A stretch of DNA of 56,634 nucleotides, from NCBI GenBank assembly GCA_002269645.1, contig NIVC01000927.1, positions 347,601 to 404,234 of the forward strand. The letters run 5' to 3'. The stretch comes from Macrostomum lignano. Its lineage: Eukaryota. Both the position numbers and the translations under genes were made by a program. Shown in pieces: positions 3,901 through 51,171 of the stretch; the stretch's first letter is position 1; each line of letters opens with the position of its first letter. The notes under the pieces are model-generated. The model saw only the letters and a list, made by a program, of their open reading frames with translations. It was not told the origin of the DNA and did no database searches.

Positions 3901-4774
3901 TAATCTTTGTTGGGCTCACCTTTACGACCTCAGAGGAGTTCGGCAAAACATTCGGCGCTTTTATGCCCTTGTCGACGTCAGCCAGAAGCTTGTTGCATCG
4001 GGCACAGAGTGCTGCAGGTAGCTGCTCATCATTCGCATTGTAGTTGGGCAAAAAGTGTGCCTGAATGCGTTTCAGCGAGGCATTACCTATTCGTTGCATT
4101 GATGAGCCCTTTTTGTAGCACAACAAGCAGATCTTGAGGCGATTTTCTTCATGTGATAGTGCATGCGTTGCATGGCTCATTTCTTTATACATGTATGGCA
4201 AGGTGAGTAGAAATATTGAAAGTAGGCTTGAAGCTCACTATGGACTGCAAGTCAAGTCACTAACAAATACAGGTTGAGCTTGGTTTGTGAAAAGAAATCG
4301 TGCCTTGCAGAATTTATCATCAATTGATTTTATTATACAAGTAGGAAGCATACAACCAACATGCCTATAACAGTCTAGAGTCAAGTACACTGGACAGAGC
4401 ATACTCAAGCTCATGGGTCAGAGGGACCAAATTTGAGTACATTGGCAAGCCACACAACCCAAACCCCCGCTGAGCTACATGAAACTTTATATTTATGTGT
4501 TGCATCATCTAAGTTGGTTTACTATAATTGAAATCGGCTATCACTGGTTTAACTTACATGTACCTTGATCTACGGTTCTACCCATATGTACAATCAATGC
4601 AAATTATGCATTATCACAAGCTATGGAATGAAGTACTTGTAGAATGGAGATAGCTCGGTAGATTTTTTTAAAATTGCACGTATACCTTGCTACTAAGGTT
4701 CAGGTGAATGCATAAATCACTGTCATTTGAGGCTGACTTTATTTTCACCTTGAGAAGGCTTCAGGACATGTGTG
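959..4774 (-). mobile_element. Complete autonomous DNA transposon, Transib/RAG1-like/Chapaev-related (3,816 bp)
   Basis: The left end at 959 reads CACACATGTCTTGAAGCC and the right end (4774, reverse complement) reads CACACATGTCCTGAAGCC. Imperfect TIRs span ~959-1083 and ~4647-4774 (about 80% identical by hand alignment). Identical 5-bp flanks GGAGA lie at 954-958 and 4775-4779 (TSD). One long internal transposase ORF. Confidence 0.93.
2060..4192 (-). CDS. DDE transposase of the Transib/RAG1/Chapaev type with an N-terminal Cys/His zinc-binding region (~710 aa; first ATG 4192, alternative ATG 4180)
   Basis: Uninterrupted ORF; the ORF-track start at 4201 is a TTG. Catalytic-type motifs: KVGIDSGGGFLK (D1), AVDMK followed by C-x2-C at +19 (HPCPWC), GLHLLLG, GNFAGN, KVHAVIDH (H-x4-H) and WSEQVVETAH (E). 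Their order and spacing match the RAG1/Transib core. The N-terminus has H-x7-C-x2-C, P-x3-C-x2-C and CKICETAR. Confidence 0.9.
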   Translation of the reverse strand: MYKEMSHATHALSHEENRLKICLLCYKKGSSMQRIGNASLKRIQAHFLPNYNANDEQLPAALCARCNKLLADVDKGIKAPNVLPNSSEVVKVSPTKITRQSSSCACKICETARFNPIGKGLGTWKPEPHSLGRPACSDPDHGLPPAQPVVICQRCHSMVGRGLPHYCTQTQRRENLFSKLSLDRRGAEIHASDVIKAKAASTGSNSRFQLATRGRDLTVCVGQRAGSSTSMRGGCAVPAEEFSRFQQTLCLSGRQTKLAAQFFRAWKGRKSIEPNLRSKLSAIDSALDDLFELTNLEMDCAKGKREMRSIVFCTDPLALIDRVMARRQVSADDGALIKVGIDSGGGFLKFCVSIVPAQGLKDQPTGSRSTYAEGACRFHFEDGGVRKLLLLAIAESVSESYDNLQQILNLLNLQGFSFCAAVDMKISNAILGIQCCSSTHPCPWCETARIDFSNPDRTNVLRSIGGIRLQAFEYQRTVEEKAPRNVSAAAFKNCVRPPLLEVPDSTMVLQAIPPMGLHLLLGVTNRLFEELDTQLRGLEDCQISTDDWLQQLGLRRPLQNGGNFAGNACECLLNGVDILIGMLAQHNVFSAMPVAHALRCFRDVKASCFGMSVCGDFENRVRAFEQAYIDLGIRVTPKVHAVIDHVVQFLNMSNLAGEPKKGLGFWSEQVVETAHHDFSSMWQDFRIDFHHPSYPDRLRKCVVAYCSRHA

Positions 4775-12100: not shown

Positions 12101-15100
12101 CGACGGCTACGTGGCCGCGTTTTCGCAGGCCCATTCGGGCGACGTGACGCCGAACACGAGGGGCGCCTTCAACGCTAAGAATGGGAGCAAGTGTGACTCG
12201 CCTATTGTCGTGCGTGCCCTGCGGCCTCTGGGTGGGCTAGATAATTCCAGATAAATTAATCATCTAATTAATTAATCAGCTAATGAATGACCGAGACTAG
12301 CTAATGAATGACCGAGACTAGCTAATGAATGACCGAGACTAGCTAATGAATGACTGAGACTAGCTAATGAATGACCGAGACTAGCTAATGAATGACTGAG
12401 ACTAGCTAATGAATGACTGAGACTAGCTAATGAATGACCGAGACTAGCTAATGAATGACCGAGACTAGCTAATGAATGACCGAGACTAGCTAATGAATGA
12501 CTGAGACTAGCTAATTAATGACCGAGACTAGCTAATGAATGACCGAGACTAGCTAATGAATGACCGAGACTAGCTAATTAATGACCGAGACTAGCTAATG
12601 AATGACTGAGACTAGCTAATTAATGACTGAGACTAGCTAATGAATGACCGAGACTAGCTAATGAATGACCGAGACTAGCTAATGAATGACCGAGACTAGC
12701 TAATTAATGACCGAGACTAGCTAATGAATGACCGAGACTAGCTAATGAATGACCGAGACTAGCTAATTAATGACCGAGACTAGCTAATGAATGACTGAGA
12801 CTAGCTAATTAATGACTGAGACTAGCTAATGAATGACTGAGACTAGCTAATGAATGACCAGTACCTTTGAGCTAATGAATGAACAAGTCCTAATGATTGT
12901 AAGTAAAACTTGATTGCAACAATTTTTTACAAAATCGCTTCAGAAGACGTTCGATTGCCGATCGAAGGGCCCGGGCAAGGACCAATTTGAAAGCCTGATG
13001 ATTATCGGCCGAAAGCAGTTCGAAATGGCCCTTGTAAGTGCCAGTTGTGCACCAGTACTATATTTAATCAGTCTCTTAGTTACTTACACGTACCTACGCC
13101 CACTCACTTCGCCTACGCTCGCTAATGTCTGCAATTGTCAAAGATTTTTTAGCCCAACAGTTATAGGGTGTAGCAATTAAAGAATGAACACGGTTACACG
13201 GCTCAAGAAAGTCATATCGAGCTCTGAAAAGAAAAAATATTGCAAGACCAAAATGTTTACAGAATGTTGCCAGTTATAGAATTTGAAGCATTTTGGCCTC
13301 TCTTATCTTCGGCCCTTAAATGTCCGAGTCGTAGAAAAAGCAGTGAGACGCTTGTTACTTAAGATTTCCCCCCCCCTCCCTAGAGATTTGCCCGCCCCCT
13401 TGAGATTTGCCCCCGCCCGAGATTTGTCCCCCTTGAGATTTGCTCCCTATGAGATTTGTCCTCTTCCCTAGAGATTTGCCTACTCGAGATTTGCCCCCCC
13501 CTTTGAGATTTGACCCCCCCCCCGAACTTTGCCCCCCTTGAGTTTGCCCCCCAATGAGATTTGCCCCCTTGAGTTTTCCCCCATTGAGATTTGCCCTCTC
13601 CACTTGAGATCACATTGAAATGCGCCTTCTCCCCTTGAGATTTGTCCTCTCCCCTTGAGATTTGCCCTCTCCACTTGAGATTTGTCTTCTCCCCTTGAGA
13701 TTTGTCCTCTCCCCTTGAGATTTGTCCTCTCCCCTTGAGATTTGCCCTCTCCACTTGAGATTCGTCCTCTCCCCTTGAGATTTGTCCTCTTCCCCTGAGA
13801 TTGCCTTCTCTTGAGACTCTCCTACTAAGATCCCCCAGGCAGCTTTCAGAATCCCCCATATCTATCGCCATCCAGCCTTAGTTAGCTAGTCTTTTTGCGG
13901 ATATTCTCGGGTTTGTTTGAAGCAATTTTCTTAGGGGATTTCTCCTGATCCTCATGGCCCAGAGCATAAGTGAGTGAGAAGTGGTTGGAGACTGACATCT
14001 CCTATAGCCTAGGTTGGAGTTATCGGATGGGGGAACATGATATATCCATTCTAGTTATCTTATATTACTTACAGACCTATCTCATTTTGCTTGCTCATAT
14101 ATGCCGCTATATTTTGCCCTGGCTGTGCTATTTATAGAAACATGTTTGCAGCCGGGTGTGGCCACATGGGACTGCTATGTGATGCATGATTCTATTCAGT
14201 TTGAAAGCCTCCTAATTATGTTTTGATAATTATTTAGCAAAACAAAATAATGGCGCAGTTAACGAATGAGAGACAGGAAGCTGTTGCTAGGGGCGCATAG
14301 CAGGAACGCTAGATATGGTTGCTAGGACCCTCTAGCAGAGGTATAACCAGGGTTACTAGTAGAAGCACCAGGGGTTGCTAGGGAAGGGACGCTATTAAAG
14401 ATAAACCTGTAGTTGCTAGGGGCCAATTTCACTTGTTACGAGAGTATTATAAGCAATATGAACCCTCCCCAATGCTATTTTCATTCCGTCCAGAAACTCC
14501 ACCAGTCGGCAGCTGTTAGCGACCTGGTCGGCCGCGATCCCCAGCTAGCAACAGTTTACGACGTTCGCGATGTCACCTCGGAGGCTTTCCCGACGCCGTG
14601 GACAGGCGAGGCTAACAATAGGGATCAGAACTCGCCGCCGCTGCTGCGCGTCTGCCCAGCTGCGTTCGGATACGGTTTCTGCGGCGGCACCGTTGACGGC
14701 TATGGCCTGTTTGACTATTTCACTATGGGCCGGCGCCAGTCTAGCGTATTGATTAACCTCATCAGGGATATCATGGGTCCCGTGACACCGGCTGATCAGG
14801 CCTGTCACGGCACTAAACAGATCTGCATGAATGCGGGTCGGGTGCGTTTGTAGGGCCTTTGTTGCCTTTGTCGCGCCTTTCCTGCCCTTTTCTGCACCCC
14901 ATCCCCCGCCTTCTCCTCTCTGCACCCCCAGCCCACGCCTTTTCCTACCCTTCTCTGCACACTCACCCCACATACTGCCATTCTCTGCACTCCCACCCCG
15001 TGCCTTTTCCTATCCTTCTCTGCACACTCACCCCACTTCTTATCCTGACCTGCCCTTCTCTGCACACCCACCCCACGCTTTTTCCTGCCCTTCTCTACAC

Positions 15101-18100
15101 CCAACCCCACGCCATTTTCCTGCCCTTCTCTGCACCCCCACCCCACGCCTTTTCCTACCCTTCTCTGCACACCCATCCCACGCCTTTTCCTGCCCTTCTC
15201 TGCACCCCCACCCCACGCCTTTTCCTACCCTTCTCTGCACACCCATCCCACGCCTTTTCCTGCTCTTCTCTGCACCCCCACCCCACGCCTTTTCCTGCCC
15301 CTTCTGACTTCTCTGCACCCAGCCAACTTAGCCTTCTTATAACTCCACTCTCGCATTCGAGGACGAACTTCATTCATAGCTCAAAGCTAAGAATGTGTTT
15401 TAATAAAAATTTCAGATAATGTGGTCGGATATTCCATTTATGTCGAACACTGTGCCAACGCAAATCATGCGAATTGGACAGTTGTTTATAACGGCACTGC
15501 CGGCAGAGATGACCACCATGTCGGGAAGGAGGCTAGTTGAGCATTTGAAACGGGTGAGTTAATAAATTATATCGATTAAAATATTGGTATTTGGCATGGT
15601 AGATCCTATTCACGTTTTGTAATCTAATATTACGAGTATCTCATTGGTGTTTTTTGTTGCAGACTTCAGGATTTCCAAAGAACGGAAAAGTCCAATTAAA
15701 CGGCTTGTCCAATGGGTACTTCTTCTATGTTACCACCGAGCATGAGTACAATGTGAGCAATACAGTTATGATGAAGCTATCGGAGATTAAGTTACGTTCG
15801 TATTATTGTGGACTGAGGATCTCAGGGATTAGGGATCGCGATCATGGGATTAGAGATCAGGGATATGAGATTAGAAATCGGGGATCATGGGATTAGAGAT
15901 CGGGGATCATCGGATTAGAGATCGGGGATCATGGGATTAGAGATCGGGGATCATGGGATTAGAGATCGGGGATCATGGGATTAGAGATCTGGGATCATGG
16001 GATTAGGGATTAGGTTTTAAGCTCGGAATATTATAGACTGGGGATCCTAGAATTAGGGATCGGGATCCCAGGATTAGGAATCGGGATCCTAGGATTAGGG
16101 ATCGGGATCCCAGGATTAGGGATCGGGATCCTAGGATTAGGGATCGGGATCCCAGGATTAGGGATCGGGATCCTAGGATTAGGGATCGGGATCCCAGGAT
16201 TAGGGATCGGGAGCCTAGGATTAGGGATCGGGATCCTAGGATTAGGGATCGGAATCCTAGGATTAAGGATCGGGATCTCAGGATTAGGGATTGGGATTCG
16301 GGATCCTAGGATTAGAGATCGGGAGCCTAGGATTAAGGATCGAGACCTAAGGATTAGGATTACTGTCTAGACTTAGCACTCTTCGTGCCGCCTCGTAGGG
16401 CACATACTACGAAGCAGGCGCCACTCTGTACGGGCCCAACACGCTCGCCTACTACGCCTGGCACCTGGCCCGCCTCATGTCGCACCTGCTGGGGACCGGC
16501 AGTCAGCCGCCACTCCAGCTGCAGGCCAGCGACGCCAATTTAGACAAGTCGCAGCGCCTGGAGCAGATCGCCGGCCAGCCCAATACTGGCTACGATTTTG
16601 CCGGCCTGACTGCCAATTTTGGTGATCCGCTTAATGCCACTAGGCGGGCCTATGCTCCGGTGAGTACGCTTCGCTGGTTTACCTTTCACTCCGCCTGTCT
16701 GTCACACTTATGGTTAGTTCACTCTCACTCCGCCTGTCAGACTCGTGGTTAGTTCACTCTCACACCGCCTGTCACACTTATGGTTAGTTCACTCTCACAC
16801 CGCCTGTCACACTTATGGTTAGTTCACTCTCACTCCGCCTGTCACACTTATGGTTAGTTCACTCTCACTCCGCCTGTCACACTTATGGTTAGTTCACTCT
16901 CACTCCGCCTGTCTGTCAAACTTATGGTTAGTTCACTCTCACTCTGCCTGTCAGACTCATGGTTAGTTCACTCTCACTCTGCCTGTCAGATTCATGGTTA
17001 GTTCACTCGCATGTCTTTCACACTCATGGTTAGTTCACTCTCACTCTGCCTGTCAGATTCATGGTTAGTTCACTCTCACTCTGCCTGTCAGACTCATGGT
17101 TAGTTCACTCTCACTCTGCCTGTCACACTTATGGTTAGTTCCCTCTCACTCCGCCTGTCAGATTCATGGTTAGTTCACTCTCACTCCGCCTGTCTTTCAC
17201 GCTCATGGTTAGTTCACTCTCACTCCGCCTGTCTTTCACACTCATGGTTAGTTCACTCTCACTCCGCCTGTCTTTCACACTCATGGTTAGTTCACTCTCA
17301 CTCTGCCTGTCAGACACATGGTTAGTTCACTCTCACTCTGCCTGTCACACTCATGGTTAGTTTATTCTCACACCGCCTGTCTGTCATACTTATGGTTAGT
17401 TCACTCTCACTCCGCCTGTCACACTTATGGTTAGTTCATTCTCACACCGCCTGTCACACTTATGGTTAGTTCCCTCTCACTCCGCCTGTCAGATTCATGG
17501 TTAGTTCACTCTCACTCCGCCTGTCTTTCACGCTCATGGTTAGTTCACTCTCACTCCGCCTGTCTTTCACACTCATGGTTAGTTCACTCTCACTCCGCCT
17601 GTCTTTCACACTCATGGTTAGTTCACTCTCACTCTGCCTGTCACACTTATGGTTAGTTCACTCTCACTCCGCCTGTCTTTCACACTTATGGTTAGTTCAC
17701 TCTCACTCTGCCTGTCAGACTCATGGTTAGTTCACTCTCACTCCGCCTGTCTTTCACACTCATGGTTAGTTCACTCTCACTCCGCCTGTCTTTCACACTC
17801 ATGGTTAGTTCACTCTCACTCCGCCTGTCTTTCACACTCATGGTTAGTTCACTCTCACTCTGCCTGTCTTTCACACTCATGGTTAGTTCACTCTCACTCC
17901 GCCTGTCTTTCACACTCATGGTTAGTTCACTCTCACTCCGCCTGTCTTTCACACTCATGGTTAGTTCACTCTCACTCCGCCTGTCTTTCACACTCATCGT
18001 TAGTTCACTCTCACTCTGCCTGTCACACTTATGGTTAGTCCACTCTCACACCGCCTGTCTTTCACACTTATGGTTAGTTCCCTCTCACTCCGCCTGTCTG

Positions 18101-19964
18101 TCACACTGTCTATCACTCCCCCCTCCTGTCGCACTTAGGGTGAGTCGGTGCAGCTGAGCTTCATCTCGTGCAATCCGCGCAACTCTCTGGCTTTGCGCGG
18201 CCATTCATTTGTGCTGGTGGAGCGGTACAGCGAGCGGCTGCACCGTTGGATAGTTGCCAGCACAGACTCGGGCCTGTATACCAGGTTAGTTAGCGCTTGC
18301 TATTTACTGTTTAAAATCTTAATAGCTATAAACCTAAATAGACAATCGCTCCTCACCTAAATAGACAATCGCTCCTCACCTAAATAGAGAATCGCCCCTC
18401 ACCTAAATAGACAATCGGCCCTCACCTAAATAGACAATCGGCCCTCATCTAAATAGACAATCGGCCCTCACCTAAATAGACAATCGGCCCTCACCTAAAT
18501 AGACAATCGCTCCTCACCTAAATAGAGAATCGCCCCTCACCTAAGTAGACAATCGGCCCTCACCTAAATAGACAATCGGCCCTCATCTAAATAGACAATC
18601 GCCCCTCACCTAAATAGAAAATCGGCCCTCACCTAAATAGACAATCACCCTCACGTAAACAGAGAATCGGCCCTCACCTAAACAGAGAATCACCCTCATC
18701 TTAAAAAGAGAATCGCCCTCACGTAAACAGAGAATCAGCCCTCACCTAAACAGAGAATCACCCTCATCCTAAAAAGAGAATCGCCCTCACCTAAATAGAG
18801 AATCGCCCCTCACCTAAATAGACAATCGGCCCTCACCTAAATAGACAATCGGCCCTCATCTAAATAGACAATCGGCCCTCACCTAAATAGACAATCGGCC
18901 CTCACCTAAATAGACAATCGGCCCTCACCTAAATAGACAATCGGCCCTCACCTAAATAGACAATCGCCCTCACGTAAACAGAGAATCAGCCCTCACCTAA
19001 ACAGAGAATCACCCTCATCCTAAAAAGAGAATCGCCCTCACGTAAACAGAGAATCGGCCCTCATCTAAATAGACAATCGCCCCTCACCTAAAAAGAGAAT
19101 CGCCCTCACCCACCAAGCCAATCGCCCAAACACCGCCACTTCCAACTCGCAGATTCCGCTGGTATCCGCAAGCTTTCTTTCAAAGCGTTGCCAGGGTAAC
19201 TTGGACCATTCCGGCCGGCCAGCAACCGGGCGACTATCGGATCCGGCACCAAGGCCACTGCCGGCCACTCATGTCCGGAATGCTGGCCGCCGATGTCCGG
19301 CCATTCAGTGGAGTGTCCGGCCGCTTTCGCGTGCTTCCAGACGGACTTTGGCAGCCTGGTAGGTTAAAAATATTGGGCTTGAGTGACCGGGCTTGTGTGT
19401 TGTCACCACTACCACCATCTGCTCAGTGTGCTGCCACCATCTGCTCAGTGTGTTGCCACCGTCTGCTCAGTGTGCTGCCACCGTCTGCTCAGTGTGCTGC
19501 CATCGTCTGCTCAGTGTGCTGCCACCATCTGCTCAGTGTGCTGCCATCGTCTGCTCAGTGTGCTGCCACCGTCTGCTCAGTGTGCTGCCACCGTCTGCTC
19601 AGTGTGCTGTCTGAGCAATGCAAGATACAAAACCTGTCTACCTGGCGGGGGGGGGGGTTCGTGATAAAGCAAATCAAATTTCACTTCCATTGGACGAAAT
19701 CTGCTTAAATTAAACTGGCGTTCTACAATTTCGAAATTCAAGGCAGTTTCTGTTTCTCAATTCGTTTCAGGCAAATCCTTGATGGAGGAGCCTGGCTGGG
19801 CTCAGCGGGACTCAAATCTTCAGCTCAGCTTGAGCGGCAGTCCAGCAGCAGCAATGACTGCAGATGCAGCTTCAACTCTCCGCTTCTGGCCGAGTCTGCT
19901 GCTGACAGGAACGAATTTCTGCTTCTGCATGCTGTTAAACTATTGCTTCAGCATTGGCTTATAG
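9193..19964 (+). CDS. ASAH2: Neutral/alkaline non-lysosomal ceramidase-like protein, 13 exons, 779 aa
   Basis: Exons: 9193-9324, 9915-10055, 10150-10326, 11112-11239, 11921-12209, 12944-13033, 14494-14841, 15416-15553, 15663-15752, 16399-16659, 18139-18284, 19153-19358, 19771-19964. All introns are GT-AG, phases are consistent, and the total is 2340 nt. Motifs: signal peptide, GAGLADVTGP, MGYAN, SATHTHAGPGG, WFPVHGTS, GDNKG, GDVTPN, AEMTTMSGRRL, YEAGATLYGP, NPRN, GDYRIRH. Confidence 0.92.
11290..11880 (+). repeat. ~53-bp minisatellite in ceramidase intron 4
   Basis: Unit CAGCCAATAAAAATGCAGGCCCATCCGACCATTACTCCAACCCCTGCCCCCTC. Confidence 0.9.
12280..12860 (+). repeat. 21-bp minisatellite in ceramidase intron 5
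   Basis: Unit CCGAGACTAGCTAATGAATGA. Confidence 0.95.
13358..13810 (+). repeat. ~20-bp minisatellite in ceramidase intron 6
   Basis: Unit TTGAGATTTGTCCTCTCCCC and variants. Confidence 0.9.
14860..15320 (+). repeat. 35-bp pyrimidine-rich minisatellite in ceramidase intron 7
   Basis: Unit ~TGCCCTTCTCTGCACCCCCACCCCACGCCTTTTCC. Confidence 0.9.
15822..16360 (+). repeat. 21/22-bp minisatellite in ceramidase intron 9
   Basis: Units GGGATTAGAGATCGGGGATCAT and AGGATTAGGGATCGGGATCCT. Confidence 0.9.
16665..18110 (+). repeat. 35/39-bp minisatellite filling ceramidase intron 10
   Basis: Unit CATGGTTAGTTCACTCTCACTCCGCCTGTC(TTTC)ACACT. Confidence 0.95.
18335..19112 (+). repeat. 23-bp minisatellite filling ceramidase intron 11
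   Basis: Unit AAATAGACAATCGGCCCTCACCT. Confidence 0.95.
19408..19612 (+). repeat. 22-bp minisatellite in ceramidase intron 12
   Basis: Unit CTGCCACCGTCTGCTCAGTGTG; the Cys-rich ORFs here are repeat translations. Confidence 0.95.
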
Positions 19965-23272: not shown

Positions 23273-26200
23273 ATGAAGGCTGCCTTTGCATTTCTTTGTG
23301 GTAAGTGAGGGTTCACTTTTTTAAGTTAAAGTAAAGCTAAAACCGAAATTGAGTGGCTTAGCATCCGTGGACAAAATGTATTGATTGTTTGCTAGCCCTC
23401 TCGCCTAGTTTAATACTTAGTAATAGTATGCAGAAGGCAGATAAAACTTGCCAATCAAAAGATCTGGAGCATGGTAAATATGGCACATCCTGAAATACCA
23501 ATTTTAGCTTTCTTATCTGAGCTGTCTTTACAAACTATTCTTGATGAGCAAGCTGGAACAGTTTTAAAAGATGAATGGTCCCCTGTCCGGCCGCCCCCCT
23601 CCCCTATCAGGTCTTCAAATTTATCAGAATTAGAACATTAATCCTAATTGTATATGCTGATCAACTTGTCATTGTTTACCATTTAGTAATGCCCTTTTAA
23701 TAAAAGTGTTTGCTAGTTTTTTTTACTTATTGTTATTATTCTACTTACAAAAAAGTCATGATTAGGGCCTACTATGTTAGTAGGTTTGTAATTTTGATTA
23801 AATCATGAATAATTAATTGTTAGATCATGACAACATAAAAAGGCTTAACTTTAGGATCTTAGTTTCTTAAAAACACTAGTACTATAATAATAATATTAAT
23901 AAAACCAATTATGAATAAATATAGGCCAAATGAATAGATAGATTCCAGTTATTTTTGTGAAAAGTCATTTTGGTAATAGATATTCCTGGGAACAATAGTC
24001 TAGACAAATAGTCATTTTGGATACAAATTCTTTCTGTGAAAGACACATTTCATTAGAAAAAAATGAAAGATATGGTGAGTATATTTATTTAGTGTATGGA
24101 GGCACTTCATAACATCATACAATTTATATTTTGTACATATTTGAAAAATTCCATCAAAAGATTAATATATTTAAGAAAAAATCTTACTCAACTGATTATA
24201 TTGCTTGTTTTTATGCATATTATTTTGATTTTTCCTAGAATATTTATAAACTATAAACATAGAAGATCTTTATCATAATATGTTGACCACAAAAATATAA
24301 GCATAAGCATATATAAATAGAAGTGCTTAGGCCTATCCCCACGGTCCCATGCTAATAATTCCAATTTTATCCACATGGATCTATGTCGATAATTTCCAAC
24401 TTATCCCCATGGCAGCTTATTGGAATAAAGAACCTTAAAATGAATCTGTTCAAAAATTGTCTTTGTTTTCACTGTTTTACAATGTAAAAAAATCTGTTTC
24501 ACAATCTAATTAAACTACATGCATTGAATACTGAATAGTATCGAGTACTTTGTTTAAACTTTTTGTCATTAAAAGGGTTAATTTTAAATATTTGCTTAGC
24601 TACTGGCTTTACTTATAACAACCAAATGACCCAAAGATCAAGGCAAATGAGACTTGCAAAATTTAACTTTCAATATATAATAATAATGATAATATTACTA
24701 ATAATAATGACAATCTTGATTTAATATCAGTACACAAAACTAAATACAAACAACTGCACAATCTTAGCTGTGGGGATAAGCTGAAAATTATTGACACAGC
24801 CTATAGACTTGAATGATGGCAGCTATTTCAATAACTTTAATAAGCTGCCATGGGGATAAGTTGAAAATTATTGACATGGATCTGTGTGGATAAAATTGGA
24901 ATTATTGGCATGGGACCGTGAGGATAAGCACTTCCTATATAAATATTTACTACCTTTGGATAATGTACAAATTCAAAATATCACAACTTTTAAATAGTAA
25001 ATAAACAAAATTAAATAAAACAATGCTTTACCCTTTTAAAAACAACTGAAATTTTAGGTTTCATATGGTTTAGGATTGGCAAGATTATTCTCTGCTTAAA
25101 ACCAAAATGACTAGCACCAAAAAGGTCTTTTTTCTTGTCACCAAAGTGACTAATAAGAAGCAGCTCTTTGGAATTATATTTTTCAATTTTTATGAAACCC
25201 AAAATTTGTAGTTGCTTGCATTTAATATGAAATAAATAATTTACAAGTAAATATTAACTACTTAAACGTTTAGTTAAAATGAAACTTAAACAAATTGTTC
25301 CTTAAATAAGTTTTCTTTTATTATATTTACCAATTTCTTGACTTCACAAGAATAATTTGATTAAACCAACCATCCCACAAACCCACCAGGTCTGGCTCTC
25401 GCCAGCTCCACTTTGGCTCTCTATGACTCATCTGATGATGTTATTGAGCTCACTACAGCCAACTTCAACTCTAAAGTGCTGAACAGTGACGAGCTCTGGC
25501 TAGTTGAATTCTATGCACCCTGGTGCGGCCATTGTCAGAGCCTGGCACCAGCCTGGAAGCAGGCTGCCCGCGCGCTCAAAGGTGTAGTCAAAGTTGGCGC
25601 CGTCAACATGGACGAGCACCAGTCTGTTGGCCAGCCCTATGGTATCCGCGGCTTCCCCACTATCAAGGTGTTCGGCAGCGACAAACAATCGCCTAGCGAC
25701 TACAATGGCGCCAGATCGGCCGATTCTATTGTTGACACGGCGCTTAGCCACCTACAGGCTATGGTTCGACAGCGACTTAGCGGTAAATATTCCGATACTC
25801 CTTGCATTCTAATCGGGAGTGACGGGGGGGCATTTTTGTTAGTGCTTCATAGCTAGGAACACCGTGACTGTCACTGAGGCCTTATCCTCCCACAGGTGGC
25901 GGATCCTCTCGCGGCGGCGGCGGCAGCGGCAGCGGCGCCGACGTTATTGAACTGACCGACGCCAATTTTGAAAGCACAGTAATGGGCAGCAAAGATCTGT
26001 GGCTAGTTGAATTCTTTGCGCCCTGGTGCGGCCATTGCAAACAGCTGAAGCCGCACTGGGACCGGGCAGCTAGCGAGCTGTCTGGGAAGGTGAGGTTTTG
26101 GAATACAAGAAATTATTAATTTATTTGGCCAAATCAAGCTGGTTCAAATCCCTAGCCTTGTATAATTGTATACTATATGATATCATATTACTAACAGTAG

Positions 26201-29200
26201 CATTGATTTATTTTTTCATTTGTAACACAGCCAGGAGGGAGACATTCCAGAGTTACCAAAAATTATTTAGTGCAAAGGGTCGGCAAACTCCTGCCCTCGG
26301 GTCCTTTGAAACTTCACAATAGCAATCCGGCTCGCTTAAGATTTGTGTCTTCTCTCTCCCCCTCTCTGTCCTCTCTTCCCTCTTCTCTGTTCTCTCTCCC
26401 CCCTCTTCTCTGTTCTCTCTCCCCCCTCTCTGTCCTCTCTTCCCTCTTCTCTGTTCTCTCCCCCCTCTTCTCTGTTCTCTCTCCCCCCTCTCTGTCCTCT
26501 CTTCCCTCTTCTCTGTTCTCTCTCCCCCCTCTCTGTCCTCTCTTCCCTCTTCTCGTCTCTTCCCTCTTCTCTGTTCTCTCTCCCCTCTTCTCTCTTATCT
26601 CTCCCCTCTTTTCTTCTCTCTGCTCTCTTCTCTGTTCTCTCTCCCCTCTTCTCTGCTCTCTCCCCTCTTCTCTCTTATCTCTCCCCTCTTTGTTCTCTCT
26701 GCCCTCTTCTCTGTTCTCTCTCCCCTCTTCTCTCTTATCTCTCCCCTCTTCTCTGTTCTCTCTCCCATCTTCTCTGTTCTCTCTCACCTCTTCTCTCTTA
26801 TCTCTCCCCTCTTCTCTGTTCTCTCTCTCATCTTCTCTGTTCTCTCTCCCCTCTTCTCTGTTCTCTCTCTCATCTTCTCTGTTCTCTCTCCCCTCTTCTC
26901 TGTTCTCTCTCCCCTCTTCTCTGTTCTCTCTCCCCTCTTCTCTGTTCTCTCTCTCATCTTCTCTGTTCTCTCTCCCCTCTTCTCTGTTCTCTCTTCCCTC
27001 TTCTCTGTTCTCTCTCCCCTCTTCTCTGTTCTCTCTCCCCTCTTCTCTGTTCTCTCTCTCATCTTCTCTGTTCTCTCTCCCCTCTTCTCTCTTATCTCTC
27101 CCCTCTTTGCTCTCTCTTCCCTCTTCTCTGTTCTCTCTCCCCTCTTCTCTGTTCTCTCTTCCCTCTTCTCTGTTCTCTCTGCCCTCTTTTTTATTCTCAT
27201 CTGGCCTGCAGCCACAAGCTGTATTCTTTTTCTGGCAGTTGAGGTAAAAGTTTGCCGACTCCTTGTGTGGCCAAACTCAGTTTACTAATGAGTGCGCCCT
27301 ATTCACCTGTACAGGTGAAACTCGGCGCCCTGGACGCCACTGTGCACACATCGATGGCCGCCCGCTACGGTATCCAAGGCTATCCGACTATTAAAATGTT
27401 CCCGGCCGGCCGAAAAACTGGCGAAGCCGTCGAATACGACGGCGGCCGCACCTCGGACGATATTGTCCGGTGGGCTCTGGACAAACTGGCCGGTAAGTAA
27501 TGCATCAAATTTAATCCAAGTTTGTACTAATTCACATGTACTTTTAATAATAGGATAGGCCACTCAGGGATATTGGCACTCAGATGGCAAGGCTTGGGGG
27601 AATTGCTAAGATAGCAAGGCTTACGGGGGGATTGCTGAGATGTCAAGGCTTACGGGGGGATTGCTGAGATGGCAAGGCTTACGGGGGGATTGCTGAGATG
27701 TCAAGGTTTACGGGGAGAATTGCTGAGATGGCAAGGCTGAGGTCAGAAGCTACATGTAGTCTATTCAATTTTTTTTATTAAATTCTCTGTTGGCTCCCCA
27801 ACAGGGGGCGCTGATTGCTAGTTTCTAGCTATGTTTAGTATCTGTCTGTACACTAATTAGATGACGACGCATCAAAAGCATTTTTTCTTAGAAGCAGGGA
27901 GCTGTGCGCATCCTCGCGCACTTTAAGCGACGTTGTCGCACAACCGGCGAGAGGCATTACTGCCCATTCCACCGGCCCCTCCTGAGCAAGGATACGTACG
28001 CAATCACAGGAGTGTACAGCGGCCCTAACTTAATTTATCGTTAGGCCTGTACACTTCACTGTGACTTGGGGGTTGGCCATCAAGGGCGTTAATTACACGA
28101 GCAGAGCCAAGCCAAGATTCCAATTTAGCCCCAAATTAATGTGACTGCACTTGGAATCGAGCCTGGGCCGCTGGCACATCCACTGGGCTACGGTCCCCTT
28201 CATCAAAAGCATGGCTAATCCTGCCTTTAACTACTCGTCTGAAGCTAATCCATATTAAATTCAATCGGTCTCCGCAGACTCCATCGCTCCGCCAGAAATT
28301 GTTGAACTAACTGACCAGACTGTGCTGCAGGACCACTGCCTTGACAAGCAGCTGTGCGTTGTATCCGTGCTGCCTCAGCTGCTCGATTGCCAGTCCGACT
28401 GTCGCAACGGCTACCTGAAGATACTGAAAGAGATTGGCGAGAAGTACAAGAAATTAATGTGGGGCTGGGTCTGGTTCCAAGGCGGCGATATGCAGACGCA
28501 GGTAAAATACGGGCGATTGACGAACTACCCACTTTCCACTTTTCATTTCTGTTGTTTCTTCTAATTTAAAATTTTCTGTTCTAATTTTTTCTTTTTTTTC
28601 GCATCCAGCTGGAGGAGGCTTTCGGTATCGGCGGTTTCGGCTACCCAGCCATGGCTGTTGTGAACGCCAAGAAGATGAAGTTCTCCCTGCTGAAAGGCCC
28701 ATTCACCTTTGACGGTATTAACGAGTTCGTGCGCAGCCTGTCGCTCGGCCGCGGCTCCACCGAGCCGGTGCGCGGCGCCAGCATCCCGGAGGCTAAGAAG
28801 CGAGACCCGTGGGACGGCAAGGACGCCAAGGTGAGCGCTCATTTTTGGCTAGCTAGCTTCAGGGTTCTTCAGGAGCCTCTGGAAACCCTGCTAGCTCTCC
28901 CAATTCTTCAGGACCCACTGCAAACACCCAATAGCCCCCGATTTTTTCAGGACCCACTGCGAACACCCCGATAGCTCCCTATTTATCAGGACCCATTGCG
29001 AACACCCCGCTAGCCCCCGATTCTTCAGGACCCGCTGTGAACACCCCGATAGCTCCCTATTTATCAGGACCCATTGCGAGCACCCCGCTAGCCCCCGATT
29101 TTTCAGGACCCATTGCGAACACCCCGCTAGCCCCCGATTCTTCAGGACCCATTGCGAACACCCCGATAGCCCCCGATTTTTTCAGGACCCACTGCGAACA

Positions 29201-32200
29201 CCCCGATAGCCCCCGATTTTTTCAGGACCCACTGCGAACACCCCGATAGCCCCCGATTTTTCAGGACCCATTGCGAACACCCCGATAGCCCCCGATTTTT
29301 TCAGGACCCACTGCGAACACCCCGATAGCCCCCGATTTTTCAGGACCCATTGCGAACACCCCGATAGCCCCCGATTTTTTCAGGACCCACTGCGAACACC
29401 CCGATAGCCCCGATTTTTTCAGGACCCACTGCGAACACCCCGATAGCCCCCGATTTTTCAGGACCCATTGCGAACACCCCGATGGCCCCCGATTTTTTCA
29501 GGACCCACTGCGAACACCCCAATAGCCCCCGATTTTTCAGGACCCATTGCGAACACCCCGATAGCCCCCGATTTTTCAGGACCCATTGCGAACACCCCGA
29601 TAGCCCCCGATTTTTTCAGGACCCACTGCGAACACCCCGATAGCCCCCGATTTTTCAGGACCCATTGCGAACACCCCGATAGCCCCCGATTTATCAGGAC
29701 CCATTGCGAACACCCCGATAGCCCCCGATTCTTCAGGACCCATTGCGAACACCCCGATAGCCCCCGATTTTTCAGGACCCATTGCGAACACCCCGATAGC
29801 CCCCGATTTTTCAGGACCCATTGCGAACACCCCGATAGCCCCCGATTTTTCAGGACCCATTGCGAACACCCCGATAGCTCCCTATTTATCAGGACCCATT
29901 GCGAACACCCCGCTAGCCCCCGATTCTTCAGGACCCGCTGTGAACACCCCGATAGCCCCCGATTTTTCAGGACCCATTGCGAACACCCCGATAGCCCCCG
30001 ATTTTTTCAGGACCCACTGCGAACACCCCGATAGCCCCCGATTTTTTCAGGACCCACTGCGAACACCCCGATAGCCCCCGATTTTTTCAGGACCCACTGC
30101 GAACACCCCGATAGCCCCCGATTTTTTCAGGACCCACTGCGAACACCCCGATAGCCCCCGATTTTTCAGGACCCATTGCGAACACCCCGATAGCCCCCGA
30201 TTTTTTCAGGACCCACTGCGAACACCCCGATAGCCCCCGATTTTTCAGGACCCATTGCGAACACCCCGATAGCCCCCGATTTTTCAGGACCCATTGCGAA
30301 CACCCCGATAGCCCCCGATTTTTTCAGGACCCACTGCGAACACCCCGATAGCCCCCGATTTTTCAGGACCCATTGCGAACACCCCGATAGCTCCCGATTT
30401 ATCAGGACCCATTGCGAACACCCCGATAGCCCCCAATTCTTCAGGACCCATTGCGAACACCCCGATAGCCCCCGATTTTTCAGGACCCATTGCGAACACC
30501 CCGATAGCCCCCGATTTTTCAGGACCCATTGCGAACACCCCGATAGCCCCCGATTTTTCAGGACCCATTGCGAACACCCCGATAGCTCCCTATTTTTCAG
30601 GACCCATTGCGAACACCCGCTAGCCCCCGATTCTTCAGGACCCGCTGTGAACACCCCGATAGCCCCCGATTTTCAGGACCCATTGTGAACACCCCGATAG
30701 CTCCCTATTTATCAGGACCCATTGCGAACACCCCGATAGCTCCCTATTTATCAGGACCCATTGCGAACACCCCGCTAGCCCCCGATTCTTCAGGACCCGC
30801 TGTGAACACCCCGATAGCCCCCGATTTTTCAGGACCCATTGCGAACACCCCGATAGCCCCCGATTTTTCAGGACCCATTGCGAACACCCCGATAGCCCCC
30901 GATTTTTCAAGACCCATTGCGAACACCCCGATAGCCCCCGATTTTTTTAGGACCCACTGCGAACACCCCGATAGCCCCCGATTTTTCAGGACCCATTGCG
31001 AACACCCCGATAGCCCCCGATTTTTCAGGACCCATTGCGAACACCCCGATAGCTCCCTATTTATCAGGACCCATTGCGAACACCCCGATAGCTCCCTATT
31101 TATCAGGACCCATTGCGAACACCCCGCTAGCCCCCGATTTTTCAGGACCCATTGCGAACACCCCGATAGCCCCCGATTTTTTCAGGACCCACTGCGAACA
31201 CCCCGATAGCCCCCGATTTTTCAGGACCCATTGCGAACACCCCGATAGCTCCCGATTTATCAGGACCCATTGCGAACACCCCGATAGCCCCCAATTCTTC
31301 AGGACCCATTGCGAACACCCCGATAGCCCCCGATTTTTCAGGACCCATTGCGAACACCCCGATAGCCCCCGATTTTTCAGGACCCATTGCGAACACCCCG
31401 ATAGCCCCCGATTTTTCAGGACCCATTGCGAACACCCCGATAGCTCCCTATTTTTCAGGACCCATTGCGAACACCCCGCTAGCCCCCGATTCTTCAGGAC
31501 CCGCTGTGAACACCCCGATAGCCCCCGATTTTCAGGACCCATTGTGAACACCCCGATAGCTCCCTATTTATCAGGACCCATTGCGAACACCCCGATAGCT
31601 CCCTATTTATCAGGACCCATTGCGAACACCCCGCTAGCCCCCGATTCTTCAGGACCCGCTGTGAACACCCCGATAGCCCCCGATTTTTCAGGACCCATTG
31701 CGAACACCCCGATAGCCCCCGATTTTTCAGGACCCATTGCGAACACCCCGATAGCCCCCGATTTTTCAAGACCCATTGCGAACACCCCGATAGCCCCCGA
31801 TTTTTTTAGGACCCACTGCGAACACCCCGATAGCCCCCGATTTTTCAGGACCCATTGCGAACACCCCGATAGCCCCCGATTTTTCAGGACCCATTGCGAA
31901 CACCCCGATAGCTCCCTATTTATCAGGACCCATTGCGAACACCCCGATAGCTCCCTATTTATCAGGACCCATTGCGAACACCCCGCTAGCCCCCGATTCT
32001 TCAGGACCCGCTGTGAACACCCCGATAGCCCCCGATTTTTCAGGACCCATTGCGAACACCCCGATAGCCCCCGATTTTTCAGGACCCATTGCGAACACCC
32101 CGATAGCCCCCGATTTTTCAAGACCCATTGCGAACACCCCGATAGCCCCCGATTTTTCAAGACCCATTGCGAACACCCCGATAGCCCCCGATTTTTCAAG

Positions 32201-32640
32201 ACCCATTGCGAACACCCAATAGCCCCCGATTTTTCAGGACCCACTGCGAACACCCGCTAGCTCTCCCAATTCTTTAGGAGCCGCTGTGAACACCCCGCGG
32301 CCGCTAGCCCCCGATTCTTCAGGACCCGCTGTGAACACCCCGCTAGGTCTCCCAATTCTTCAGGACCCGCTGCGAACACCCCGCTAGCTCTCCCGATTTT
32401 TCAGAACTCGCTGAAAACCCCTGCTAGGTCCTAATTCTTCAGGTGCCGCTGCAAACACCCCTAGCTCCCCTGACTCTTAGCAAACCCCAACAACTTGTTA
32501 GTAACAAGAACCAATAATCGATAGCTCAATAATTATTGCTTCTCTCTGAGGTTCAGCTTCCCACTGTTGAGGATGACGGCATTGACGTGTCAGACATTGT
32601 GCTGGACACCATCGGCAAAGACAAGAAGCAGGAGCTTTGA
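23273..32640 (+). CDS. PDIA6: Protein disulfide-isomerase A6 (P5), 7 exons, 440 aa, isoform ending KQEL
   Basis: Exons: 23273-23300, 25390-25782, 25896-26089, 27315-27492, 28278-28501, 28609-28830, 32557-32640 (1323 nt, phases consistent). Signal peptide [19 protein letters not shown], two thioredoxin domains with WCGHC, a Gly-rich linker, a b-domain with GGFGYPAM, and an acidic tail ending KKQEL*. Confidence 0.95.
24320..24935. mobile_element. MITE/foldback element with ~100-bp TIRs in PDIA6 intron 1
   Basis: 24320-24421 (GAAGTGCTTAGGCCTATCCCCACGGTCCCATGCTAATAATTCCAATTTTATCCAC...) is the near reverse complement of 24839-24935. The arms contain subrepeats and the core is AT-rich. TA flanks are possible, but the TSD is not certain. 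Confidence 0.8.
26345..27200 (+). repeat. CT-rich ~21-bp minisatellite in PDIA6 intron 3
   Basis: Unit CCCCTCTTCTCTGTTCTCTCT. Confidence 0.95.
27580..27740 (+). repeat. 29-bp minisatellite in PDIA6 intron 4
   Basis: Unit GCTGAGATGTCAAGGCTTACGGGGGGATT. Confidence 0.85.
27890..28198 (-). mobile_element. Possible tRNA-derived SINE-like element
   Basis: The minus strand begins GGGGACCG-TAGCCCAGTGG (A-box-like) and continues to GGCTCGATTCC (B-box-like), but the A-B spacing is only ~17 nt. The 3' boundary is uncertain. Confidence 0.3.
28885..32470 (+). repeat. 39-bp minisatellite (~3.6 kb) filling PDIA6 intron 6
   Basis: Unit CAGGACCCATTGCGAACACCCCGATAGCCCCCGATTTTT; all ORFs here are repeat translations. 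Confidence 0.97.
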
Positions 32641-32959
32641 GCCAATAGTGCGTTTTGAGAAGTATCCTATTATAGCATATTATTCTATTTACTTTTGGAT
32701 AAAGAAGTGAAGAAGTTAAACCTCAGTTCTGGGTTGCATGCAATTTGCAGCGATTGCAGGTCACTAACGGTATTATCTGGCAAAATAGTATATAATTTTT
32801 ATTTTATCTTTTTTTCTCTATTTTCTCAACTTTACCGAGCATCTGGTTGAGGATTATTTTTATCATACGCAAATGATGCCGCTATCAGTAGGGTAATCGG
32901 GTTCTATGCAATAAATACTCGTAATTTACTTGTTTTATCCGGCCACTTTCCTTCCCCAG

Positions 32960-33022
32960 ATAACGCAGGACGACGAGATTGACCTGTCAGAGCTGGGCAT
33001 GGAGAGCAAGACTGAGCTATAG
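32960..33022 (+). CDS. PDIA6: Alternative terminal exon of PDIA6 (ITQDDEIDLSELGMESKTEL*)
   Basis: Strong acceptor CACTTTCCTTCCCCAG, phase 0 as required by exon 6. Acidic DDEIDLS motif as in PDIA6 tails, ending in the KDEL-like KTEL followed by TAG. AATAAA at 33266. Confidence 0.8.
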   Translation: MTQDDEIDLSELGMESKTEL

Positions 33023-34002
33023 AGAGCACCTGCCCGTCTATATAATACTCAACTGTACTCATTAATTCGACCACAATACTGATGGACAATTAACTATTAA
33101 CCATACTGCAATGAATGTTCTTCTAAAGAAAGACTACCCTTGAAAACCTATTGTCATTGTTGAGTAATCTTATGCGTATATTGTTACTAATATTTAACTA
33201 TTGTTTAAATCGTGTTAACCCGTGAACAATGTGAGGAACAGACCGCATTTGGTGCCAAAATTTCTAATAAAAACAAAAATAGAAAATTAGACTTGGCAGT
33301 CTCGTTTCCAGTTTATTAGCATCCATATTCGGTATTGTTTTGTGTTGCCATGGCATCCGGGTTCAAACTATTCGTTTTTGCCGCTCCCCCAATGAATTCT
33401 GTATGCTGCTGCTAAATTGCGCAAACTATACTACTACTGTTAGTAAATATCCAAGTGTGACAGCATTCTCTTTTCTTGCGTTATTTTCCTCACGCTTACG
33501 TCTCATTGGATTTGTAGTTTATCACATTTGTTCGGGTGGCTGTTGTTTGATAAAAATTAAAGTTATTTTCTTTTTGTCGAAAGTCTTTTCTCCTTTCTGT
33601 TGAAAATGTGTTCTTTTTGTTGCCTTTTTGTTGCCTGCGTTGTTTTAATAAAATACTGTTTTCGCTCTCTGTTTGTCTGTCTGTTTAATTATTTCAGCAA
33701 TGCCCCCCTGAACTGCCAGCTTTGTCAATTGTCTGCTTGCTAGTATACTGTAAACCACCCGGTATAGAAAATCTAAATATTTAAAAATATATCCACTTGA
33801 GAAACTTGCGAAAAGAAATCCTACCATTTGCCATTGAGTTTGTCTCTGTTACTCTCAGCAGCAGAACTGCACTAATTGGTTTTATTGTGTAGTTTATTTA
33901 TTTTTAATAGCCCTTTGCTACCAGAAGTTTTAATCTGCTACGGGTCATGCGGCTCTTAACTATCTTTTTTACTCATCTGCTCTGATTACCGCTGACTACT
34001 AC

Positions 34003-35982: not shown

Positions 35983-51171
<15,189 letters not shown>

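What the first reader, a model, noticed from the sequence alone, without database searches (positions are those of the whole stretch)
32557..33022. PDIA6 has two tandem alternative last exons with different ER-retention signals (KQEL vs KTEL)
Seen: exon 7a (32557-32640) encodes [27 protein letters not shown] and exon 7b (32960-33022) encodes ITQDDEIDLSELGMESKTEL*. Both are phase 0 with pyrimidine-rich acceptors and both have the acidic D-D-x-I-D-x-S motif. Each has its own AATAAA (32910 and 33266), and the first lies just upstream of the 7b acceptor. Exon 7b is absent from the ORF track. Established: KDEL variants differ in retrieval efficiency. Inference: exon duplication allows splicing and polyadenylation to tune ER retention versus secretion of PDIA6.
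Basis: partly seen in the sequence, partly recalled or inferred. Interest (0 to 1): 0.7.

Follow-up and report, generated by a model that had tools for sequence, protein, structure and literature searches.

The report
Duplicated last exon in flatworm PDIA6
The PDIA6 protein-folding gene of the flatworm Macrostomum lignano has two tandem copies of its last coding exon, ending KQEL and KTEL; the public RNA-based annotation uses only the downstream KTEL copy, and I could not test whether the upstream copy is ever used, so this is an ordinary exon duplication with a possible minor second isoform.

Summary
The window is the last 56.6 kb of Macrostomum lignano contig NIVC01000927.1. It holds a complete PDIA6 (P5) gene whose exon 6 ends in phase 0 at 28830. 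Two in-phase terminal exon candidates follow: 7a (32557-32640, ...KQEL*) and 7b (32960-33022, ...KTEL*).

- 7b is not a new or doubtful exon. It is the terminal coding exon of GenBank proteins PAA74739.1 (this locus) and PAA60490.1 (the duplicated locus). Both models were built from RNA-seq.
- 7a is the copy without transcript evidence. It matches the ancestral last exon in position and sequence, and it is intact at both loci, with one synonymous difference between them.
- The annotation pipeline kept only near-dominant isoforms, so it could have hidden a minor 7a isoform.
- The first AATAAA is not conserved in the second locus.
- The four invertebrate loci I checked each have a single terminal exon, so they do not share the duplication.
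- In human-cell reporter assays, K-X-E-L with any X except proline gave ER localisation. A retention-versus-secretion switch is therefore speculative.

Best reading: an old tandem duplication of the last exon, with 7b dominant and 7a probably a minor alternative (about 50%) or a silent relic (about 35%). Interest is low to moderate.

The parts
23273..23300 (+). PDIA6 exon 1: start codon and first part of the signal peptide (MKAAFAFLC plus one base), donor G|GTAAGT. The GenBank CDS is open from 23156 because the 5' UTR has no in-frame stop.
   Evidence: P0001 begins RHVSYKF...[17 protein letters not shown]
25390..25782 (+). Exon 2: end of the signal peptide and the first thioredoxin domain (WCGHC)
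25896..26089 (+). Exon 3: Gly/Ser linker and start of the second thioredoxin domain (WCGHC)
27315..27492 (+). Exon 4: rest of the second thioredoxin domain
28278..28501 (+). Exon 5: PDIA6 C-terminal thioredoxin-like domain, first part
28609..28830 (+). Exon 6: ends ...PWDGKDAK in phase 0, donor AAG|GTGAGC. This donor is shared by both candidate terminal exons.
28865..32461 (.). 39-bp minisatellite, about 92 copies, filling most of intron 6. The intron is about 2.3 kb shorter in the duplicated locus.
   Evidence: exon 6 to 7a is 3726 nt here and 1470 nt in L001
32549..32550 (+). Extra AG 6 nt upstream of the 7a acceptor. If used, it would add Val-Gln in frame. It reads GG in the duplicated locus.
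32557..32640 (+). Exon 7a: [27 protein letters not shown]. It matches the ancestral last exon in position and sequence, and lies inside the annotated intron 6. No transcript evidence was available.
32910..32915 (+). AATAAA 44 nt upstream of the 7b acceptor, a possible poly(A) signal for a 7a mRNA. It reads AACAAA in the duplicated locus.
32960..33022 (+). Exon 7b: ITQDDEIDLSELGMESKTEL*. This is the terminal coding exon of GenBank PAA74739.1 and is identical in the duplicated locus.
33266..33271 (+). AATAAA at the end of the 7b 3' UTR. It is conserved in the duplicated locus. The 3' UTR shows 1 mismatch plus one 1-base indel over 273 aligned nt between the two loci.

Best explanation
The terminal coding exon of Macrostomum lignano PDIA6 (P5/CaBP1 orthologue) was duplicated in tandem. 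The four invertebrate outgroups I checked do not share the duplication. The downstream copy, 7b (KTEL), has the stronger pyrimidine tract and a conserved 3' UTR and AATAAA. The dominant mRNA uses it at both duplicated loci (shown). The upstream copy, 7a (KQEL), lies in what is annotated as intron 6 and keeps everything a terminal exon needs. It is most likely still used as a minor or condition-specific alternative, chosen by competition between the two 3' splice sites for the exon 6 donor (inferred). A 7a mRNA could end either at the proximal AATAAA or simply at the 7b poly(A) site (inferred). Both products would be ER-resident PDIA6 differing in the length and charge of the acidic tail (27 against 20 residues) and in the -3 residue of a K-X-E-L retrieval signal. 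Any effect on retention strength is probably small (inferred).
For: Identity: the query is 100% identical over 100% of its length to PAA74739.1 of M. lignano, and other animals' PDIA6 match at 56-65%. Pfam finds two Thioredoxin domains and Thioredox_PDIA6_C. Use of 7b: both GenBank models end in ...KITQDDEIDLSELGMESKTEL. These models come from StringTie/TACO assemblies of RNA-seq plus TransDecoder (PMC5730564). The CDS that is open upstream of the ATG is typical of an ORF called on a transcript. 7a as the ancestral type: in Lingula and Mya the last exon starts at the same intron position with L-P or L-E, then an acidic stretch, then IDLSDV, and 7a aligns better than 7b to those tails (E 6e-4 and 0.006 against 0.04 and 0.085). 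Maintenance of 7a: the reading frame, acceptor, KQEL and stop are intact at both loci, with one synonymous difference. The coding cores of 7a and 7b remain similar while their flanks show no similarity. Why 7a could be missed: TACO was run with --isoform-frac 0.75, which, from my own knowledge of the program, reports only isoforms at 75% or more of the major one.
Against: No protein or transcript record ends in 7a. The cluster has 3 members, exact look-ups of four 7a versions failed, and a short-query search found none. The proximal AATAAA is not conserved between the loci. The 7a-7b interval is the fastest-diverging part of the locus (21 of 319 positions against 44 of 3074 in the other introns), so it does not look like a conserved 3' UTR. 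The one change in 84 nt of 7a equals the intron rate (1.4%), so the two-locus comparison cannot show constraint on 7a.
Confidence: 0.5

Rival explanations
1. 7a is a silent relic. After the duplication, 7b took over as the only terminal exon. 7a is now part of intron 6 and has not yet decayed.
For: Only 7b appears in the transcript-derived models at both loci. 7a diverges between the loci at the intron rate (1 of 84 against 1.4%). The window copy has a competing AG 6 nt upstream of the 7a acceptor. The proximal AATAAA is lost in the other locus and the interval after 7a evolves fast.
Against: 7a still has an intact acceptor, frame, acidic motif, K-X-E-L and immediate stop, and still resembles orthologous tails of distant phyla better than 7b does. 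The non-coding flanks of 7a and 7b have lost all similarity, so a neutral copy of that age should have decayed. This argument fails if only the exon core was copied or if 7a was abandoned recently.
Confidence: 0.35
2. One reading: a regulated switch between two ER-retrieval signals of different strength (KQEL against KTEL), set by coupled splicing and polyadenylation, tunes how much PDIA6 is retained or secreted.
For: The two tails exist, and in this copy each has a downstream AATAAA. KDEL receptors do discriminate between variants (PMC2140024). KTEL does not fit the PROSITE pattern, whereas KQEL does.
Against: In the reporter screen every K-X-E-L except X = Pro gave ER localisation, and KTEL proteins were ER-resident. 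Both motifs are ordinary sole termini of PDIA6 in other animals. There is no evidence that 7a is expressed, and the first poly(A) signal is not conserved. Nothing here bears on regulation.
Confidence: 0.1
3. 7a is the true main terminal exon and the 7b models are an annotation artefact.
For: 7a is the more orthologue-like tail. The two loci share reads, so the two models are not fully independent.
Against: The models derive from RNA-seq assemblies, not from ab initio prediction. 7b has the better acceptor, is identical between the loci, and has a conserved 3' UTR and AATAAA. 7b-like tails (IDLSELG...K[TS]EL) occur in PDIA6 of other organisms (P0025, P0103).
Confidence: 0.03

Closest known systems
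PDIA6 / P5 / CaBP1 family of protein disulfide isomerases
   Same: Signal peptide, two thioredoxin domains with WCGHC, the PDIA6 C-terminal domain, an acidic tail with IDLSD and a C-terminal K-X-E-L. Identity to invertebrate PDIA6 is 56-65%.
   Different: The four other loci examined (Lingula, Tubulanus, Dimorphilus, Mya) have one terminal exon; this gene has two. The annotated product carries the shorter, less acidic 7b tail.
C. elegans crld-1 (CRELD), alternative last exons 9a and 9b
   Same: One gene and one shared upstream donor, with two alternative last exons that decide how the protein stays in the ER (PMC6245729).
   Different: The crld-1 exons are unrelated in sequence (transmembrane segments against KDEL), and both isoforms are shown experimentally. 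Here the two exons are duplicates, both end in K-X-E-L, and only one is documented.
Human P3H1 (LEPRE1) splice isoforms with and without KDEL
   Same: 3'-end splicing decides the C-terminal ER-retrieval signal of an ER enzyme (PMC9956579).
   Different: In P3H1 the minor isoforms lose the signal through a frameshift or intron retention. Here both candidate tails keep a retrieval signal.
Tandem exon duplication as a source of alternative exons (general phenomenon; my own knowledge, not checked in a paper here)
   Same: Adjacent, same-phase, sequence-related exons that substitute for each other.
   Different: Most described cases are internal, mutually exclusive exons. Here the duplicated unit is the terminal coding exon with its stop codon.

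Membership tests
PDIA6 (P5) protein disulfide isomerase | Two catalytic thioredoxin domains with CGHC active sites | tested here: met
   APWCGHCQ and APWCGHCK are in the spliced product. Pfam Thioredoxin: 2 stretches, E 1e-62.
PDIA6 (P5) protein disulfide isomerase | C-terminal PDIA6-type thioredoxin-like (b) domain | tested here: met
   PF24541 Thioredox_PDIA6_C, 37.3 bits against a cut-off of 27.
PDIA6 (P5) protein disulfide isomerase | N-terminal signal peptide | tested here: inconclusive
   [19 protein letters not shown]|LYDSS reads as a typical signal peptide and aligns with orthologue N-termini, but no predictor was available.
PDIA6 (P5) protein disulfide isomerase | Closest relatives are PDIA6 of other animals | tested here: met
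   The named hits among the 120 best listed are almost all PDIA6 or PDIA6 homologues, at 56-65% identity over 90-100% of the query.
KDEL-type ER-retrieval signal | C-terminal tetrapeptide fitting PROSITE [KRHQSA]-[DENQ]-E-L or an experimentally validated variant | tested here: met
   KQEL fits PROSITE. KTEL does not, but K-X-E-L with any X except Pro localised a reporter to the ER, and KTEL proteins were ER-resident (PMC2140024).
Alternative last exons | Two terminal exons, each with its own acceptor and stop, sharing one upstream donor | tested here: met
Alternative last exons | Each terminal exon has its own poly(A) signal or site | tested here: inconclusive
   AATAAA at 32910 and 33266 in the window. 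The first reads AACAAA in the duplicated locus, which has an ATTAAA elsewhere in the interval. No 3'-end data were available.
Alternative last exons | Mature transcripts exist for both exons | not testable with these tools
   7b is supported through the RNA-derived GenBank models. 7a has no record, and raw RNA-seq cannot be reached from here.
Tandem exon duplication | Adjacent exons of the same phase with significant sequence similarity | tested here: met
   Coding cores score 18 against 7.2 +/- 1.2 for shuffles, 0 of 300 reaching it. They share the DD-x-ID-x-S ... K-x-EL* pattern, found nowhere else in the window.

The most novel reading that the evidence does not exclude
M. lignano makes two PDIA6 isoforms from duplicated last exons in a regulated way (by tissue, regeneration or ER stress). 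Their tails (KQEL against KTEL, and a long against a short acidic stretch) would give measurably different KDEL-receptor retrieval, so that one isoform partly escapes to the cell surface or is secreted. That would be a splicing-encoded dial for extracellular PDI activity.
Probability: 0.08. Interest if true: 0.55.

Novelty: new member of a known kind. Interest (0 to 1): 0.3.

Why it matters
If both exons are used, this would be a clean natural case in which one ER oxidoreductase is made with two different retrieval tails. M. lignano is transgenesis-capable, so tail-dependent retention could be tested in vivo. If only 7b is used, the locus shows a terminal exon being replaced by its own duplicate. 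Either way the practical value is modest. It corrects the reading of the locus: 7b is the annotated exon and 7a is the unannotated one. It also flags a possible missing isoform in the Mlig_3_7 annotation.

Tried and rejected
- **Short-query protein search.** A search with exon 6 plus 7a returned only 44 candidates, all short proteins. It did not even recover P0001, which shares 74 identical residues, so it says nothing about a 7a isoform.
- **Exact look-ups.** Four 7a versions (both loci, with and without the 5' extension) and the Met-start 7b version were all absent from the collection. No M. lignano RNA-seq assemblies appear to be in it.
- **Literature.** A search for the gene id Mlig030607 found no paper. 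Two broader searches did not turn up a precedent for alternative last exons that both encode a KDEL-type signal.
- **Two-locus comparison as a test of selection on 7a.** Too little divergence: 1 change observed against about 1.2 expected from the intron rate.
- **"Isoform X1/X2" PDIA6 entries in other species.** The Lingula and Argopecten X1 and X2 entries are the same protein. The Bacillus rossius entries differ by two residues in the first thioredoxin domain, not at the C-terminus.
- **An internal donor in 7a that could splice 7a onto 7b.** Only weak GT sites (GTTGAG, GTGTCA, GTGCTG) lie at codon boundaries. Rejected by inspection.
- **RNA genes.** Rfam and tRNA scans of the window found nothing.

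Full report
**What is in the sequence**

The stretch 32557-32640 translates to [27 protein letters not shown] and 32960-33022 to ITQDDEIDLSELGMESKTEL*. I rebuilt the upstream gene from open frames and GT-AG boundaries:

| Exon | Window coordinates |
|---|---|
| 1 | 23273-23300 |
| 2 | 25390-25782 |
| 3 | 25896-26089 |
| 4 | 27315-27492 |
| 5 | 28278-28501 |
| 6 | 28609-28830 |

- Exon 6 ends in phase 0 at AAG|GTGAGC, so either candidate can follow it in frame.
- The product has a hydrophobic N-terminus, two WCGHC thioredoxin domains and the PDIA6 C-terminal domain (Pfam).
- AATAAA lies at 32910 and at 33266.
- A pattern for the acidic motif plus K-x-E-L-stop matches only these two places in six frames of the window, and matched nowhere in 200 shuffles.

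**Where the window comes from and what is annotated**

- The spliced protein ending in 7b is 100% identical over its full length to GenBank PAA74739.1 (BOX15_Mlig030607g2) of the flatworm Macrostomum lignano.
- The gene lies on contig NIVC01000927.1 of assembly GCA_002269645.1. The window is the last 56,634 nt of that contig.
- A second, collinear copy of the locus on NIVC01002145.1 encodes PAA60490.1, which also ends in 7b.
- The paper describing this assembly says the GenBank gene models are RNA-seq transcripts. They were built with StringTie plus TACO (--isoform-frac 0.75), merged with a de novo transcriptome, and given ORFs by TransDecoder. Alternative transcripts were removed only when their CDS was identical (PMC5730564).
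- The CDS that is open upstream of the ATG (RHVSYKF...) fits an ORF called on a transcript.

So the exon 6-7b junction has transcript support. 7b is the annotated last coding exon, not an overlooked one.

No protein ending in 7a exists in the collections I could search:
- the cluster has three members, and the third stops at ...GKDA;
- exact look-ups failed;
- a short-query search was uninformative.

From my own knowledge of TACO, an isoform fraction of 0.75 keeps only isoforms nearly as abundant as the major one. A minor 7a isoform would therefore have been dropped.

**Which exon is ancestral**

- In Lingula and Mya the last exon begins at the same intron position, right after WDGKDG-x. It starts L-P or L-E, then an acidic stretch, then IDLSDV, and ends K-D-E-L. 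7a matches this better than 7b does.
- The Lingula, Tubulanus, Dimorphilus and Mya loci, each with 8 kb of flanks, contain only one such exon.
- The duplication is therefore not shared with these four outgroups. 7a corresponds in position to the ancestral exon and 7b is the derived downstream copy.
- 7b is still a normal-looking PDIA6 tail. IDLSELG...K[TS]EL termini occur in other organisms (P0025, P0103). KTEL, KEEL, KQEL, KIEL, KVEL and KSEL all occur as sole PDIA6 termini.

**Age of the duplication and constraint**

The coding cores of 7a and 7b are significantly similar at the DNA level. The 100 nt upstream and 250 nt downstream of each are no more alike than shuffled sequence. Either the duplication is old and both cores were preserved, or only the core was copied.

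Differences between the two M. lignano loci:

| Region | Mismatches / aligned nt | Note |
|---|---|---|
| Exons 1-6 | 3 / 1239 | |
| Other introns | 44 / 3074 | 1.4% |
| 7a | 1 / 84 | ACT to ACA, synonymous |
| 7a-7b interval | 21 / 319 | partly a misaligned T-rich patch |
| 7b | 0 / 63 | |
| 7b 3' UTR | 1 / 273 | plus one 1-base indel |

- This comparison has no power for 7a, because about 1.2 changes are expected if it is neutral.
- It does show a conserved 7b 3' UTR and a fast-changing 7a-7b interval.
- The first AATAAA reads AACAAA in the second locus, which has an ATTAAA elsewhere in the interval.
- The two changes in the 7b pyrimidine tract are C/T exchanges.
- The window's 7a acceptor has an extra AG 6 nt upstream that is in frame. 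The other locus has GG there.

**Mechanism**

Shown:
- a duplicated terminal exon;
- 7b is used by the dominant mRNA.

Inferred:
- the two acceptors compete for the exon 6 donor;
- the stronger and later 7b site usually wins;
- 7a, if chosen, ends the protein at KQEL whether the mRNA is cleaved after 32910 or runs on to the 33266 signal, so a separate poly(A) site is not required.

The last is weakened by a systematic reporter study in human cells. There, K-X-E-L gave ER localisation for every X except proline, and KTEL-ending proteins were ER-resident (PMC2140024).

**Comparison with known cases**

Alternative 3' ends that change ER retention are known:
- C. elegans crld-1 uses alternative last exons 9a and 9b to make a transmembrane or a KDEL-ending form (PMC6245729).
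- Human P3H1 minor isoforms lose KDEL (PMC9956579).

Two things differ here: the exons are duplicates of each other, and both keep a K-X-E-L signal. I found no description of this for PDIA6. It is a new member of a known kind, with one half (use of 7a) undocumented.

**Verdict**

Interest is low to moderate (0.3). The decisive test is a junction-read count in existing public RNA-seq, which I could not run.

Noticed in passing
window 49900-50166 (+): The downstream gene is a COE/EBF transcription factor (TIG domain ORF 49355-49786; COE1_HLH ORF 49953-51011). The acceptor plus the first part of its HLH exon is present as three tandem 89-nt copies (93% and 72% identical to the first). Only the last copy continues in frame, so the upstream copies are potential decoy or alternative 3' splice sites.
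   Followed up: partly
window 28865-32461 and 26350-27188: PDIA6 introns 6 and 3 are largely minisatellites (39 bp x about 92 copies, and 21 bp x about 41 copies). The exon 6 to 7a interval is 3726 nt here but 1470 nt in the duplicated locus, so the array length differs.
   Followed up: partly
window 32641-32959: The interval between 7a and 7b differs at 6.6% of positions between the two M. lignano loci. The other introns differ at 1.4% and the 7b 3' UTR and downstream flank at 0.4-0.5%. Part of this is a misaligned T-rich patch. The rest is unexplained.
   Followed up: no
window about 13156-19964 (+): The upstream neighbour is a neutral/alkaline ceramidase gene (779-aa product in the public annotation; PF04734 hit at 14413-14850). 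It is interrupted by several tandem-repeat arrays (for example 16.0-16.4 kb and 17.6-18.1 kb).
   Followed up: no
window 2063-4234 (-): A 724-codon open frame with no Pfam match. It may be a repeat- or transposon-derived gene.
   Followed up: no
window 13348-56634 vs L001: At least 20 kb of the window (13348 to about 33900) is collinear with a second contig (NIVC01002145.1) at about 92-98% identity. This fits the known recent genome duplication and redundancy of the M. lignano DV1 assembly.
   Followed up: partly
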